DNA from: Mizuhopecten yessoensis
Lineage: Eukaryota
Assembly (NCBI RefSeq): GCF_002113885.1
Contig: NW_018407519.1
Location: 855,262 to 919,261, forward strand
Direction: 5' to 3'
Length of the DNA stretch: 64,000 nucleotides
The position numbers and the translations under genes are program-made. The notes under the pieces are model-generated. The model had not been told where the DNA came from and did not search any database. It worked only from the letters and a program-made list of their open reading frames with translations. This document shows, piece by piece, positions 9,841 to 19,535 of this stretch. Numbering within the stretch: position 1 is the stretch's first letter; each line of letters opens with the position of its first letter.

Positions 9841-11837
9841 TCATGAACCCTGTTGATAAACATTGTGATGAGAAACTGGCATCCTTTTTTGCATTTCAGT
9901 TGGATGTGCCACGAGGTTAGGGGTAGCACTAGTGGAATAGGGCATAGTTTGTATGGGTACCATGGTTGGTGTGTGTGTGGTCTCCATCTGTATAACCCCT
10001 CCCTGGGTGTTGGTCGGCAGGTTCTCTAGGAACCTCAGGGTCTCCATGTAGCCAAGAAGTGTGGAGAAGGTCTGTGCAGAGGGTGTCTGTCTTGCATCCG
10101 ATGTCTGTAGGACAGTGGGCCGAGTTCCTTGTTCGCGGACTGGCTGGTACTGGACCTGGTCTAGCACCCCATTGGTGCGTACCAGCTCCATGTTAGCATC
10201 TTTGTTGGCGATCATATGGTGCTGTTGGGGTTGTGCCAGGTACATAGTTGTACCCTGGTGTTGCATTGTTCGGTAGTCATTGCCCCCAATCACTCCTGCA
10301 TCCATTGTCTGGTTCACGTTGACATGTCGGATTCCTTGATTACCCACTTCCACAGTATATCTCTCAACCTGCATTTGATTGGCTGGTGCTATGTGCAAAG
10401 TCTGCTGCATCTGAGCTGGCTGTTGTTGCTGCTGTTGGGTCATTGTTGCCATAGTGATAACTGGTTGGGCATTAATATTTTCATACAGGTGTATGGGTAG
10501 AGGTACATCTCTGTTCTCTGTTGGTATTGCATGTATAGGGTATGGGTTATTAAGTGAAGGTTGTGAGGTGACAAGCACAGCTGGCTCCTCCCTCATAGTT
10601 GGCATGGCAACAGCTTGCTCTATCCTCTCGTAGTGTTTGACTTGTCGCTCCTTCTTCTCCCCCCGGGGGGCACGTGGCGGCTTGGCATTAGGGTTATCTC
10701 CAGAGTGAGATGACCGCAAGTGACGTGTGAGATGATCTTTACGACCAAACCGCTGTGGACAGTGTTGACACAAAAAATCTTTTTTCTTTGTATGTGTTAT
10801 CATATGTCTACGTACATCCTTTTTGGTGTAAAACTTTTTACAGCAGTCTATACACTCGTGTGTTTTTTCTAAGCAGTTTTTTACAGACCGTGCACCACTG
10901 TGCACTTTGAGATGATAGAGCAGTTCCTCGCGTGTTTCGTGTTCCTTGTGACAAATGCCACACTCGGTTGTCCTCCCAGACTCGGCATCATGGAAGGCTT
11001 TATGTGTCCTATAGGAGAAATTATACGAATATTCCTTACCACATTCCTCACAAACCCAGCGTTTCTTGTTTGGGTCATGCGTTATGAGATGGTTCTTTAG
11101 ATGGTCCTTGCGGTTAAAGGACTTGTCACAGTAAGGACACTTATGGTGACGTGGACAGGTGTGTATCAGACGATGCCGCTCAAGTTTGAACTTTGACATG
11201 AAACCCTTTTTACAGTCTTCATCCTCACAAATAAATGGCTTAATGCCTGTGTGTTCAGCAACATGTATCACATAAATTGCTTCCTTGGTGAATTTCTCGG
11301 CACAATAAGGGCATGTCATAGGTTCCCTTCTTGGACCCCTCGGAGATTTTGGCTTTGGAATTTTCAAAAGTTTTCGTTTACGACCCCTCCTTTTAGGTAT
11401 GATAGGCTCCTCATCATCATCATCGTCATCATCATCGTCGTCATCATCATCAACTCCAAGGATGTCATTTAGAAGTTGATCTGTGGTTGGTTCCTCTAGA
11501 TCCTCTGTTTCATTAAATTGGATAGGTTCTTCCAACTCAGGTGAGGCAGGCTTCTCAACAACCATCACTGCTGGCTTGATCTTCGGCGGCCGACCTCTCT
11601 TTCTTGGAACATTAGGTACCATCGGATCCTGAACTCTTGCTTTCGACAAACGAGCCTTGTCAAGTCGTGCTCTCCAAGTTTTGGACGGTTTAACATATTT
11701 TCTTGGTCTTCCTTTTCTTGGCCTTCCTCGCAGTCTTTTACCGCCAGGAGGCACCCCTGGGCACATGTGTGCTTCTAATTCAGCAAATGTGCTAAACCCT
11801 TCAAAGCACACTGAACACACCCATTTGGCTGGGAATT
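9841..11837 (-). CDS. PLAG1: PR-PLAG last exon: C2HC finger, AT-hooks, poly-Asp, seven PLAG C2H2 fingers, Q/M/T-rich putative activation domain
   Basis: ORF 9841..11859; true acceptor tttctttggcag|AA at 11838-11839; the finger array matches recalled PLAG1 fingers 1-7. Confidence 0.95.
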
Positions 11838-17800: not shown

Positions 17801-19535
17801 ATATGATATCATGCCCCATGATAGAACTTTCCTACTTGGCTTTCCATTTCTGGAAATGTCTTATATCACATTGCATATTTACAACTAATGAACTATGTAA
17901 GAAAAATGTCACTTGAATCTCACATTGTCAATAATGCTTTTCAAAAAGCAAAATAACAAATAAACTTGTATCACAATATAACATTATCTTTTTGTATGTC
18001 TATATAGATCTGAAAGTTGTAAGCCATCTACGGTGTTAGTGCACACATGAATTTTGAATAACTTGTCAGATCATGAGCATCAACTATCATCATACTTACT
18101 TAGTTTTCCATCCTGTGTTTTGACTGGCTTAATGACAAGCCCTTGAGGAAGCGTCAGTCTGGCTCGGGAGGGAATGACATTGTCATACACTTGGTGGAAA
18201 CCACCATGCTTCCTGCACATCCCAGGTACACTCTTACTGCATTCAGAGCACCCTGTGTGTAACATTGAAAAAATAATGTTTAAATATAATTGGTACATTG
18301 TACTATCTAGATTTATAAATTATTGAATTTAAACATTATTGGCATCAACCATAGAATTAATGTATGTTTAGAAATTAAAGAAGCAATACTTCAATCAAAT
18401 TTAATGTCCTTCTTGTGAATTAACAAGCATTATGTTTAAAATCAAAGAGGAACAGTTCAATTGTGTTTTTACACTCTAAAGGATTAGGGGAGTTGAGGGT
18501 CATTTCTGGCCTCATCAGGGATTTAGAATTAGTTGTTATATTCGTTATCTGGAATAAATGAAGTACGCAAATATGAAATTTAAAATTCATTCAACAACTG
18601 GTTTAGGAGCTCGAGATATGGCATTACAAAGAGAGACATAAACCCGCATTTTCGCAAAAAAAATGTCTCTTGTGCGCTATTTTGTTGGAAATTGGCCATT
18701 TTGAAGGAAATAAACTAAACATTCTTTAATTTTTGAAAGCCTCTGCATCCAACAAACTAAATATTTGACATTCTTACCCATTGTCATACTATGTCAATGT
18801 CCATTTGTAGAAAAGATTTTTTGTTCGTCACATGCAGAGGCTTATTTGGCTATTTCTGCATAGCAATGCAATTTTGTTGCTAGGATAGGGATATACGCAT
18901 GCCCATTGGAAGCAAATCTTCACCAAGAAAGCACTTATTATTCAATATGATGTTTATAACGGAACTTGGTAAATAAATTTTATTTGTATTTGTTTTCTTC
19001 TTGTTATTATGAGCCAAAAATGACCCAAGTCCTTTCAGGGAACATATATGTTATTTGACTGCTAAATAGCAAGGGACAACTGAAATTCCTTGTTAAATTG
19101 ATACATACGTACACTTGCACTTTAGATTGGTGTTACAAGTCACTGTAGGCAATGACATTGATATGGACATATTTACCAATACACTTGTAGTTAGTATAAA
19201 TAAAATGTAGCAGTGCGAGACAATTGAATTACATTAGTAACATGTCAGTCCATATGAAATTGATTCAGCCTAATTAATAACCCTTTACAGAACTGAAAAG
19301 TAATTACGGTTGGTTTTTTACCTTCTCTTAGTTTGACCAAAGTTGTTCATGGTTTTTTTCAGGTTTATTTTAACTGAGTTAAATAGAACTTTACTGAACA
19401 TGTCTTATTAGATCTGGCATGTTTATATAATTACCAGAGCATTATATCATTGTTAATATATGCCACGAAAACAGACTGGAGACCAGAGAACTCTGTGATT
19501 CAATACTTACAAAAGTCATCTTTTTTCGATGACAT
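9841..19535 (-). CDS. PLAG1: PR/SET-domain PLAG-family zinc-finger transcription factor, 1222 aa; complement(join(9841..11837,14338..14440,15321..15473,16079..17316,18100..18252,19511..19535))
   Basis: All five introns are GT-AG with compatible phases (1,1,0,0,1), giving a 3669-nt CDS. N-terminal zinc knuckle and PR domain resemble PRDM10/15. Seven C2H2 fingers carry PLAG signatures (RKDHLKNHLITHDPNK; FYTKKDVRRHM; KDFLCQHCPQRFGRKDHLTRH). The symbol indicates the family: a likely co-orthologue of PLAG1/PLAGL1/PLAGL2. Confidence 0.88.
12156..13857. mobile_element. Non-autonomous TIR DNA transposon (~35-bp TIR, TA target duplication) nested in the outer MITE
   Basis: TA|AGGCCAAAAAAAATTGACAACTTGGTTCTCAGGCC ... 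GGCCTGAGAACCAAGTAATTAATTTTATTTGGCCT|TA. Confidence 0.8.
12277..13447 (-). mobile_element. HINE/pearl (Helentron-associated) non-autonomous element with internal ~155-bp tandem repeats
   Basis: Minus-strand start TTTTTAGCTCACCTGG; CTCACCTG/CAGGTGAG subterminal IR; terminal AGGCCC...GGGCCT palindrome plus CTTGTTTT; ~4.5 internal repeats at 12690-13390; inserted in an A/T run. Confidence 0.75.
14338..14440 (-). CDS. PLAG1: PR-PLAG coding exon 5: C-terminal end of the PR/SET domain
   Basis: tttacag|PIPSNTELKVWYSADYAEKMGKDMLPDDESPEGA|gtatgt; ELxVWY is the PR-domain C-terminal motif; absent from the ORF track. Confidence 0.92.
14519..14601. mobile_element. 83-bp piggyBac-type MITE
   Basis: TTAA|CCCTTTCA ... 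TGAAAGGG|TTAA: CCC/GGG termini and TTAA target duplication. Confidence 0.7.
15321..15473 (-). CDS. PLAG1: PR-PLAG coding exon 4: core of the PR/SET domain
   Basis: VFREDGYVDTLDFTDEDKCNWMMFIRPAKTASEQNLVAYQFQDYIFYVSTK; NWMxF..EQNL motifs; flanked by AG and GT. Confidence 0.95.
16079..17316 (-). CDS. PLAG1: PR-PLAG coding exon 3: PR N-terminal strands (GVLAKR..QFGPF), ~390-aa low-complexity insert, then YELK
   Basis: ORF 16046..17338; acceptor ctttacag|GA, donor AAG|gtattg; 1238 nt of open frame. Confidence 0.85.
18100..18252 (-). CDS. PLAG1: PR-PLAG coding exon 2: PRDM zinc knuckle and pre-PR region
   Basis: (W)CSECSKSVPGMCRKHGGFHQVYDNVIPSRARLTLPQGLVIK resembles recalled PRDM15 WCEDC..ECPELG..VKDSFVLSRARSSLP; acacacag| acceptor and |gtaagt donor. 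Confidence 0.92.
18489..19032. mobile_element. Old degenerate TIR MITE
   Basis: GGAGTTGAGGGTCATTTCTGGCCTCAT vs reverse complement of ATGAGCCAAAAATGACCCAAGTCC. Confidence 0.45.
19511..19535 (-). CDS. PLAG1: PR-PLAG first coding exon (MSSKKDDF+T); exon spans 19511-19560
   Basis: Acceptor tatatttcag at 19561, ATG at 19535, donor gtaagt. T+GG across the intron gives the conserved knuckle Trp. Confidence 0.8.

What the first reader, a model, noticed from the sequence alone, without database searches (positions are those of the whole stretch)
9841..19535. A PLAG-family zinc-finger factor carrying a PRDM10/15-type zinc knuckle and PR/SET domain
Seen in sequence: six GT-AG exons with compatible phases join a knuckle (WCSEC..CRKH), a PR domain (FGPF / CNWMMFIRPA..EQNLVAYQ / ELKVWY) and seven fingers into one 1222-aa frame. 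Established knowledge: those fingers match the PLAG1/PLAGL1/PLAGL2 array, and vertebrate PLAG proteins have no PR/SET domain; the knuckle-PR module is that of PRDM10/15. Inference: either the ancestral bilaterian PLAG was a PRDM that lost its PR domain in vertebrates, or a PR module was shuffled onto PLAG in this lineage. Either way it would be a PRDM architecture outside the usual subfamilies, coupling PLAG DNA specificity to a chromatin module. Tyrosines equivalent to the PRDM9 IFY and VWY catalytic positions are kept, while the FGPY position is Phe. I cannot check whether this has been published.
Basis: partly seen in the sequence, partly recalled or inferred. Interest (0 to 1): 0.9.

Follow-up and report, generated by a model that had tools for sequence, protein, structure and literature searches.

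The report
Scallop PLAG gene keeps ancestral PR domain
This is a real, transcribed scallop gene that joins a PR/SET domain to PLAG-type zinc fingers. The same layout occurs across bilaterian animals, up to sharks and birds, so the PLAG oncogene family appears to descend from a PRDM-type ancestor.

Summary
Six GT-AG exons on the minus strand (19535 to 9841) read as one 1222-aa frame. Spliced RNA contigs from three studies, plus raw reads, join the PR exons to the finger exon.

The window is Mizuhopecten yessoensis or a very close relative. The deposited protein 'Zinc finger protein PLAG1' is identical but wrongly drops finger 1.

The fingers match PLAG1/PLAGL1/PLAGL2 one to one. The knuckle-PR module is closest to PRDM10/15 but lies outside both clades.

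Predicted PLAGL1 of sharks, turtles, crocodilians and birds has the same knuckle-PR-finger layout. So do amphioxus, hemichordate, echinoderm, brachiopod, annelid, nemertean, mollusc, crustacean, some insect and tardigrade orthologues.

This rejects lineage-specific shuffling and supports an ancestral PR-bearing PLAG. The PR domain was later lost in PLAG1/PLAGL2, in mammalian PLAGL1 and in several insects.

Three features are bivalve-specific:
- a disordered insert of about 370 aa splits the PR domain, which is still predicted to fold as a complete PR domain;
- two AT-hook-like motifs;
- a longer overall protein.

Methyltransferase activity is doubtful. I found no paper linking PLAG to PR domains.

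The parts
19511..19535 (-). Exon 1 coding part: ATG, MSSKKDDF and the first base of the Trp codon that opens the zinc knuckle
   Evidence: GT donor at 19510-19509. The N-terminus is the same as in P0002, Ylistrum and Pecten proteins.
18100..18252 (-). Exon 2 (153 nt): zinc knuckle C-x2-C-x8-C-x2-H (WCSEC..CRKH) and the pre-PR segment IPSRARLTLP
   Evidence: AG/GT, phase 1 in and out. One search aligns it to the knuckles of PRDM9, PRDM11 and PRDM4. Pfam PF18445 scores only 13.9 bits here but 29.8 bits in the crayfish orthologue. Amphioxus has an intron in the same codon and phase.
17210..17316 (-). Exon 3, first part: N-terminal half of the PR domain (GV..QFGPF strand)
   Evidence: PRDM2_PR positions 10-57. 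AF2 pLDDT is above 90 for residues 1-95.
16100..17209 (-). Exon 3, middle: insert of about 370 aa, rich in Q/S/T/L/E and predicted disordered, inside the PR domain. Found only in bivalves.
   Evidence: FGP-to-NWM spacing is 417 aa here, against 41-48 in the non-bivalve orthologues whose NWM motif was located and 208-417 in the bivalves measured. It is kept in the mRNA (contig record 6). pLDDT is below 50. Identity is 76% among scallops and about 17-25% to other bivalves.
16079..16099 (-). Exon 3, end: resumption of the PR domain (..EYELK)
   Evidence: The phase-0 intron is at the same place in amphioxus.
15321..15473 (-). Exon 4 (153 nt): PR core, CNWMMFIRPA..EQNLVAYQ..YIFYVSTK
   Evidence: E 3.7e-16. 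Joints seen.
14338..14440 (-). Exon 5 (103 nt): end of the PR domain, ELKVWY..YAEKMG
   Evidence: E 5e-4. Joints seen.
11761..11823 (-). Lone C2HC finger just after the PR domain (W-x-C-x2-C..F-x-T-F..L-E-x-H-x-C)
   Evidence: It is conserved at this place in PR-PLAG proteins from bivalves to alligator. PRDM10 and PRDM15 have a lone W-x-C-x2-C C2H2 finger at the corresponding place.
11584..11736 (-). Basic linker with two AT-hook-like RGRP motifs (11698-11736 and 11584-11604)
   Evidence: regular-expression scan. Present in scallop, oyster and Solemya and absent from the non-bivalve orthologues. No functional test was done.
10705..11313 (-). Seven C2H2 fingers colinear with PLAG1/PLAGL1/PLAGL2
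   Evidence: The deposited model P0002 removes 11245-11592, which holds finger 1, as an intron. RNA contigs read through its donor.
9841..10704 (-). C-terminal Q-rich tail with the conserved motif FSTLLGYMETLRFLENLP, plus the stop codon. Presumed activation region.
   Evidence: motif shared with oyster P0007. The function is inferred from the C-terminal activation domain of PLAG1 (PMC9405559).

Best explanation
This is the scallop orthologue of an old bilaterian gene, here called PR-PLAG. It encodes a transcription factor with, in order:
- an N-terminal zinc knuckle;
- a PR/SET domain;
- a lone C2HC finger;
- seven PLAG-type C2H2 fingers;
- a Q-rich tail.

Shown here:
- All parts are on one spliced mRNA.
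- The architecture is shared from tardigrades, crustaceans and molluscs to amphioxus, sharks and birds.
- The fingers follow the species tree. They place vertebrate PLAGL1 (PR kept in sharks and sauropsids, lost in mammals) as sister to PR-less PLAG1 plus PLAGL2.
- The PR module forms a well-supported clade with PRDM10-type and PRDM15-type domains, rooted with PRDM4-type.

Inferred:
- The fingers bind G-rich PLAG-type sites, because the recognition helices of fingers 3, 6 and 7 are almost unchanged.
- The tail activates transcription.
- The strongly conserved knuckle-PR module works mainly as a docking surface for chromatin or cofactors, not as a strong methyltransferase.

In bivalves the PR domain carries a long disordered insert in its most variable loop. 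It is still predicted to close into a complete PR fold.
For: Gene model and splice phases. PR profile hits in exon order.

Spliced contigs from three studies plus raw junction reads.

The deposited protein P0002 is 100% identical, and PLAG proteins fill the rest of the hit list.

The knuckle + PR + 7-finger pattern, with identical finger spacing, occurs in more than 30 orthologues. PRDM2_PR reaches E 1e-26 to 1e-38 in amphioxus, alligator, shark, hemichordate, crinoid, crayfish, katydid and tardigrade.

Finger tree: deuterostome clade 98/99, PLAGL1 clade 95/91, PLAG1+PLAGL2 clade 96/93.

PR tree: PR-PLAG + PRDM10-type + PRDM15-type 99/92; PRDM10-type 100/99; the PR-PLAG rows sit on one side of a branch in the best tree (62/74).

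The same genome holds both PR-PLAG and a PRDM10- or PRDM15-type gene in Aplysia, Anneissia and Branchiostoma.

Four intron positions and phases are shared with amphioxus.

Fold: both PR halves have pLDDT above 90. The match to PRDM4 (3DB5) is Z 19.2, rmsd 1.8 A over 134 of 134 residues spanning model residues 24-544.

A CX9C (CHCHD7-like) gene lies head to head upstream in scallop and amphioxus, as at human PLAG1 (PMC9405559).
Against: - No DNA-binding, activation or enzymatic assay exists for any PR-bearing PLAG protein, so the mechanism is inference.
- PR-PLAG monophyly on the PR domain alone is weakly supported (62/74). The mollusc branches are long.
- The vertebrate PR-bearing PLAGL1 proteins are predicted models. 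I did not see their transcripts.
- The knuckle does not reach Pfam's threshold in the scallop.
- No non-bilaterian member was identified, but most of the 150 representatives were not named, so the age beyond Bilateria is open.
Confidence: 0.82

Rival explanations
1. The PR domain is an active PRDM9-like histone lysine methyltransferase. The protein would then write a mark such as H3K4 or H3K36 methylation at PLAG sites.
For: The scallop keeps the tyrosines equivalent to the IFY and VWY positions of PRDM9. The NWM and GV motifs are kept, and the domain is highly conserved across phyla (57% mean column identity). A complete PR fold is predicted.
Against: The FGPY tyrosine is F here and is F, M, V, I, L, H or Y in orthologues. 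The IFY tyrosine is F in oyster, amphioxus and vertebrates. Only the VWY tyrosine is invariant. The nearest relatives, PRDM10, PRDM15 and PRDM4, are not established as active enzymes (my own knowledge). A disordered insert of about 370 aa sits next to the FGP strand.
Confidence: 0.2
2. It is simply the scallop PRDM10/15 orthologue, as the automatic names of oyster, starfish, Lingula and octopus relatives suggest.
For: PRDM10 is the closest solved structure by sequence (3IHX, E 3e-28). PRDM10/15 are the nearest non-PLAG hits to the PR module (45-48% identity).
Against: Separate PRDM10-type and PRDM15-type genes with 10-30 fingers exist in molluscs, annelids, crinoids and amphioxus, and form their own clades. 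Amphioxus PLAG fingers find only about 25-33% identity in PRDM10- and PRDM15-type proteins, against 41-58% in most PR-PLAG proteins.
Confidence: 0.03
3. There are two neighbouring genes, a PR gene and a PLAG gene, joined by mis-assembly or read-through. Some annotations split them this way, for example Mactra 'prdm9' plus 'plagl1', and Branchiostoma 'PRDM10' of 481 aa.
For: Split models exist in public annotation.
Against: Canonical splice joints from exon 5 into exon 6 appear in contigs of three studies and in raw reads. RNA depth is zero just upstream of exon 6 (11894-12090), so nothing points to a separate start there. The joined architecture recurs in many phyla.
Confidence: 0.02
4. A PR module was shuffled onto a PLAG gene in the mollusc or bivalve lineage only.
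Against: The same layout occurs in deuterostomes, ecdysozoans and other lophotrochozoans, and intron positions are shared with amphioxus.
Confidence: 0.01

Closest known systems
PLAGL1 of sharks, turtles, crocodilians and birds (predicted long isoforms, e.g. P0101 alligator, P0030 Mustelus)
   Same: N-terminal knuckle, PR domain, lone C2HC finger and seven PLAG fingers in the same order. About 39% identity over the knuckle-PR module and 47% over the fingers.
   Different: They have no insert in the PR domain, no AT-hook-like motifs, about 750-775 aa instead of 1222, and FGPY instead of FGPF.
Mammalian PLAG1, PLAGL2 and PLAGL1/ZAC1
   Same: All seven fingers are colinear, with the same spacings (48-50% identity). 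The helices of fingers 3, 6 and 7 are almost identical. A CHCHD7-like gene lies head to head, as at PLAG1.
   Different: The mammalian proteins start 3-50 residues before finger 1, so they have no knuckle, PR domain or lone finger.
PRDM10 and PRDM15
   Same: They are the closest PR domains outside the group (clade support 99/92). They share the knuckle and a lone W-x-C-x2-C finger after the PR domain.
   Different: They have 10-16 or more fingers of another type and their own clades with protostome and deuterostome members. They are paralogues, not orthologues.
PR-plus/PR-minus pairs such as RIZ1/RIZ2 (PRDM2)
   Same: One finger factor exists with and without its PR domain (PMC2658776, PMC3047081). 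Here the contrast is between PR-bearing PLAG proteins and PR-less PLAG1, PLAGL2 and mammalian PLAGL1.
   Different: In PRDM2 the two forms come from alternative promoters of one gene. In the PLAG family the PR-less state is fixed in whole paralogues. No PR-less transcript was seen in the scallop runs laid.
SMYD proteins (split SET domain)
   Same: A SET-type fold is interrupted by a long insertion and still closes. SMYD1-3 appear as distant fold matches (Z 6.8-7.0).
   Different: The SMYD insertion is a folded MYND finger (my own knowledge). The bivalve insert is low-complexity and predicted disordered.

Membership tests
PRDM family | PR (PRDI-BF1/RIZ) subtype of SET domain recognised by profile | tested here: met
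   exon 4 scores 59.4 bits against a cutoff of 27, and exons 3 and 5 match the flanking profile parts in order; scallop orthologue P0231 scores 105.9 bits.
PRDM family | PR domain adopts the PR/SET fold | tested here: met
   pLDDT above 90 in both halves. PRDM4 3DB5 Z 19.2, rmsd 1.8 A, 134/134 aligned; PRDM10 Z 17.1; PRDM9 Z 16.0. This is a predicted model, not a solved structure.
PRDM family | C2H2 finger array on the same polypeptide, C-terminal to the PR domain | tested here: met
   spliced contigs and reads join exon 5 to exon 6.
PRDM family | Pre-PR zinc knuckle (present in PRDM4/7/9/10/11/15) | tested here: inconclusive
   The pattern C-x2-C-x8-C-x2-H is present and aligns to the PRDM9, PRDM11 and PRDM4 knuckles. 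Pfam PF18445 scores only 13.9 bits against a cutoff of 25.8 in the scallop. The crayfish orthologue passes at 29.8 bits.
PLAG family | Seven C2H2 fingers colinear with PLAG1/PLAGL1/PLAGL2, including the C-x4-C finger 2 and the long linker between fingers 5 and 6 | tested here: met
   47-51% identity and 78 invariant columns, among them the cysteines and histidines of the seven fingers; identical spacing.
PLAG family | Fingers group with PLAG proteins rather than with other finger families | tested here: met
   beyond the bivalve orthologues, the named hits are mostly PLAG1, PLAGL1 or PLAGL2, the rest carrying other automatic names, and no PRDM10/15-type finger array appears; the finger tree follows the species tree; amphioxus PLAG fingers find only about 25-33% identity in PRDM10- and PRDM15-type proteins.
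PLAG family | Binds the bipartite G-rich PLAG consensus site | not testable with these tools
   Only inferred, from the near-identical recognition helices of fingers 3, 6 and 7.
PLAG family | Head-to-head neighbour CHCHD7 (as at the human PLAG1 locus) | tested here: inconclusive
   The CX9C exon at 25767-25892 (+) hits Pfam CHCH at E 1.4e-4, below the cutoff. A similar exon lies head to head in amphioxus L001. The human arrangement is from PMC9405559.
PRDM10/15 subfamily | PR domain nests within the PRDM10 or PRDM15 clade | tested here: not met
   the PRDM10-type (100/99) and PRDM15-type (82/93) clades exclude all PR-PLAG rows.
PRDM10/15 subfamily | Ten or more fingers of PRDM10/15 type | tested here: not met
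   seven PLAG-type fingers, plus one lone finger.
Active PR/SET methyltransferases (PRDM9 type) | Three catalytic tyrosines (FGPY, IFY, VWY positions) | tested here: not met
   F, Y, Y in the scallop; the first two positions vary among orthologues.
Active PR/SET methyltransferases (PRDM9 type) | Measured methyl transfer | not testable with these tools
   Needs a biochemical assay.

The most novel reading that the evidence does not exclude
The whole PLAG family (PLAG1, PLAGL1/ZAC1, PLAGL2) is an unrecognised PRDM subfamily, sister to PRDM10/15. Its ancestral PR-bearing form survives from tardigrades and scallops to sharks and birds. Under this reading the mammalian PLAG oncogenes and the imprinted PLAGL1 are fixed PR-less derivatives, comparable to RIZ2 versus RIZ1. 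As far as the searchable literature shows, this has not been described.
Probability: 0.55. Interest if true: 0.7.

Novelty: new member of a known kind. Interest (0 to 1): 0.55.

Why it matters
PLAG1 and PLAGL2 are oncogenes and growth regulators. PLAGL1/ZAC1 is an imprinted tumour suppressor. All three are described as plain seven-finger factors.

If they descend from a PR-domain protein that most bilaterians still have, three things follow:
- The PRDM family gains a subfamily that comparative surveys did not name. Vervoort et al. 2016 do not mention PLAG.
- Loss of the PR domain in PLAG1/PLAGL2 and in mammalian PLAGL1 becomes a datable event. It can be set against the PR-plus/PR-minus pattern known for PRDM2, and against the origin of PLAGL1 imprinting.
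- Chicken, shark, amphioxus or scallop can be used to test what a PR domain adds to PLAG-type DNA targeting.

For genome annotation, the same gene now goes under many names: PLAG1-like, PRDM10-like, PRDM9-like, PRDM4-like, or split into two genes. The bivalve split PR domain is also a natural test of how much insertion a PR/SET fold tolerates.

Tried and rejected
- Searches used exon references and the stored protein P0002, which is identical over exons 1-5.
- The look-up of encoding contigs for P0002 found nothing on record, so scallop neighbours were read from the window itself.
- Four high-scoring PR representatives turned out to be PRDM9-like proteins, about 30-35% identical and some with two PR domains: the fish proteins P0229, P0232 and P0240 and the butterfly protein P0234. 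They are not PR-PLAG, so nothing can be said about teleost or amphibian PLAGL1.
- Pfam's PR zinc knuckle model does not reach significance on the scallop.
- No outgroup other than PRDM4-type sequences was available, so the order of branching among PR-PLAG, PRDM10-type and PRDM15-type is unresolved.
- I looked for an alternative PR-less start at the in-frame ATG at 11859. RNA depth is zero at 11894-12090, so it is not supported in these runs.
- Rfam and tRNA scans of intron 5 found nothing.
- Six literature searches and one full-text check found no paper that connects PLAG proteins with a PR/SET domain. The library lacks most subscription journals, so this is not proof that none exists.

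
Full report
**What is there**

On the minus strand, six open stretches join through canonical GT-AG introns with matching phases into a 3669-nt frame of 1222 aa. The exons are:
- exon 1: 19535-19511
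- exon 2: 18252-18100
- exon 3: 17316-16079
- exon 4: 15473-15321
- exon 5: 14440-14338
- exon 6: 11837-9841

Every search used single-exon references, or the stored database protein P0002, which is identical over exons 1-5.

Pfam's PR-domain model matches in profile order:
- start of exon 3: profile positions 14-56
- exon 4: positions 51-100, E 3.7e-16
- exon 5: positions 101-122

Exon 6 carries C2H2 fingers.

**Is it one gene?**

I laid reads on window:11500-17400. Contigs of three RNA runs from three different studies join 11837|14338, 14440|15321 and 15473|16079, with GT..AG ends on the minus strand. Raw reads of a fourth run show the same joints.

One 2192-nt contig holds the whole of exon 3 without any internal joint, then exons 4 and 5 and the start of exon 6. 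It also has 283 nt further upstream.

RNA depth is zero just upstream of exon 6, so these runs show no PR-less start. 

**Organism and existing annotation**

The best hit is 'Zinc finger protein PLAG1 [Mizuhopecten yessoensis]' (P0002, 1106 aa, 100% identity).

The RNA contigs read through that supposed donor. Scallop orthologues of 1225 and 1242 aa, from Ylistrum and Pecten, are full-length like the 1222-aa model, and the Ylistrum finger region matches the window's over all seven fingers. The 1222-aa model is therefore the better one.

**The fingers**

Beyond the bivalve orthologues, most named hits to exon 6 are PLAG1, PLAGL1 or PLAGL2.

An alignment with amphioxus, alligator, mammalian PLAGL1, PLAG1, PLAGL2 and a mayfly protein shows all seven fingers colinear, with the same spacings, at 47-51% identity. 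The recognition helices of fingers 3, 6 and 7 are nearly invariant.

Amphioxus PLAG fingers find only about 25-33% identity in PRDM10-type and PRDM15-type proteins, the background level for C2H2 arrays. The second refutation test also fails.

**The PR module**

The N-terminal 180 aa of the amphioxus orthologue finds PRDM10 and PRDM15 as the nearest outsiders (45-48% identity). PRDM10 (3IHX) is the closest solved chain (E 3e-28).

In a tree rooted with PRDM4-type domains:
- PR-PLAG, PRDM10-type and PRDM15-type together form a clade (99/92).
- PRDM10-type (100/99) and PRDM15-type (82/93) are each monophyletic and exclude every PR-PLAG sequence.
- The PR-PLAG rows sit on one side of a branch in the best tree, with weak support (62/74).

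Aplysia, Anneissia and Branchiostoma each have both a PR-PLAG gene and a PRDM10- or PRDM15-type gene. These are therefore old paralogues.

The knuckle aligns equally to PRDM9, PRDM11 and PRDM4, so it is a general PRDM knuckle.

A lone finger beginning W-x-C-x2-C follows the PR domain in PR-PLAG, PRDM10 and PRDM15 alike. This suggests that the shared ancestral module was knuckle, PR and one finger.

**Distribution**

The same layout is a knuckle within a few residues of the start, a PR domain, a lone C2HC finger and seven fingers with fixed spacing. It occurs in:
- bivalves, gastropods and octopus;
- Lingula, the annelid Owenia and the nemertean Lineus;
- two tardigrades, a crayfish, a katydid and stick insects;
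- sea urchin, sea cucumber, starfish and crinoids;
- Ptychodera and amphioxus;
- several sharks, turtles, alligator and birds.

Hemipteran, beetle and mayfly PLAG-like models, mammalian PLAGL1 and all PLAG1 and PLAGL2 proteins lack it. In the vertebrate proteins the finger array starts 3-50 residues from the N-terminus.

The finger tree follows the species tree. It shows a vertebrate PLAGL1 clade (sharks and sauropsids with PR, mammals without; 95/91) beside a PLAG1 plus PLAGL2 clade (96/93), with amphioxus and then the ambulacrarians outside.

The simplest reading is an ancestral PR-bearing PLAG with later losses. Those proteins are predicted models, though.

Four intron positions and phases are shared between scallop and amphioxus:
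- in the Trp codon of the knuckle;
- two residues before the GV motif;
- before VF(K/R);
- after STK.

A CX9C, CHCHD7-like exon lies head to head upstream of the gene in both species. Human CHCHD7 lies the same way next to PLAG1 (PMC9405559).

**What is special to bivalves**

The distance from FGP to NWM is 41-48 aa in the non-bivalve orthologues where the NWM motif was located. It is 208-417 aa in the bivalves measured, the protobranch Solemya included.

The scallop insert is Q/S/T/L/E-rich. It is 76% identical among scallops but only about 17-25% to other bivalves, while the PR halves stay at 50-65%.

In an AlphaFold model built with a 29-row alignment:
- Residues 1-95 and 465-553 have pLDDT above 90.
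- The insert is below 50.
- The two halves together superpose on PRDM4 at Z 19.2, rmsd 1.8 A, 134 of 134 residues, and on PRDM10 at Z 17.1.

The insert therefore sits in a surface loop, the most gapped part of the family alignment.

Bivalves also have two RGRP AT-hook-like motifs in the linker.

**Likely mechanism**

Shown: one mRNA, a complete PR fold by prediction, PLAG-type fingers, and strong conservation of the PR module (57% mean column identity across eleven distant species).

Inferred: sequence-specific binding to PLAG-type G-rich sites, activation through the Q-rich tail, and a PR module that docks partners or chromatin.

Catalysis is doubtful. Of the three PRDM9 tyrosines, the scallop has F, Y, Y. 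The first two positions vary freely among orthologues and only the last is invariant.

**Novelty**

The gene is in public databases, and Pfam flags its PR domain. However, it goes under a mix of names and is sometimes split into two models.

The broad Prdm survey of Vervoort et al. does not mention PLAG. The Mulinia PRDM paper (PMC10451705) does not mention PLAG either, and none of its eleven listed PRDMs has seven fingers. No searchable paper co-mentions PLAG proteins and a PR/SET domain.

I therefore file it as an unnamed member of the PRDM family and an ordinary orthologue within that group. It is not a lineage-specific invention.

Noticed in passing
window 21419-27882 (+), tested exon 25767-25892: A CX9C (CHCH) gene resembling CHCHD7 lies head to head with the PLAG gene. 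Amphioxus locus L001 has a similar exon (about 5114 downwards, minus strand) upstream of its PR-PLAG gene. This matches the human CHCHD7-PLAG1 arrangement.
   Followed up: partly
window 14515-14606: A miniature inverted-repeat element of about 92 bp in intron 4, about 75 bp upstream of exon 5. It is flanked by TTAA and has CCCTTTCA..TGAAAGGG ends, which is piggyBac-like. Summed contig depth in the RNA runs reaches about 155,000, so it is very abundant in transcripts genome-wide.
   Followed up: partly
window 12686-13425: A tandem array with a 152-158 bp unit (about 3.9 copies) inside intron 5, surrounded by other high-copy repeats. Contig depths are in the thousands. There are no Rfam or tRNA matches.
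   Followed up: partly
window 11245-11592: The deposited Mizuhopecten protein (P0002) treats this stretch as an intron and so loses finger 1. RNA contigs read through its donor, and the Ylistrum orthologue keeps all seven fingers.
   Followed up: yes
window 59881-61917 (+): An intact 678-aa ORF of a Harbinger/PIF-type transposase (Pfam DDE_Tnp_4 E 1.9e-17, HTH_Tnp_4). It has a SWIM-like Cys/His motif near the C-terminus.
   Followed up: partly
window 1-925; 35343-36741; 37351-39171: Three large minisatellites: 48 bp x 19, 40 bp (also read as 80 and 120 bp) x 35, and 39 bp x 47. The last two explain the strong GC and AT skew at 36-40 kb.
   Followed up: no
window 33803-34216 (+): A 137-aa ORF that looks, from memory, like the C-terminal part of a non-LTR retrotransposon reverse transcriptase. 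It has no Pfam hit.
   Followed up: partly
related proteins P0272, P0296, P0322, P0281 versus P0139, P0141, P0135 (no window coordinates): The PRDM10-type clade includes molluscs, annelids and vertebrates, and the PRDM15-type clade includes beetles, a crinoid, amphioxus and vertebrates. This hints that the PRDM10/PRDM15 split is older than the vertebrate-specific duplication proposed by Vervoort et al. 2016.
   Followed up: no
related proteins P0142 and P0021 (Mactra), P0121 (Branchiostoma), P0226 cluster (birds): Public annotations often split or truncate this gene. It appears as a PR-only protein called PRDM9, PRDM10 or PRDM10-like, plus a separate PLAGL1 protein.
   Followed up: partly
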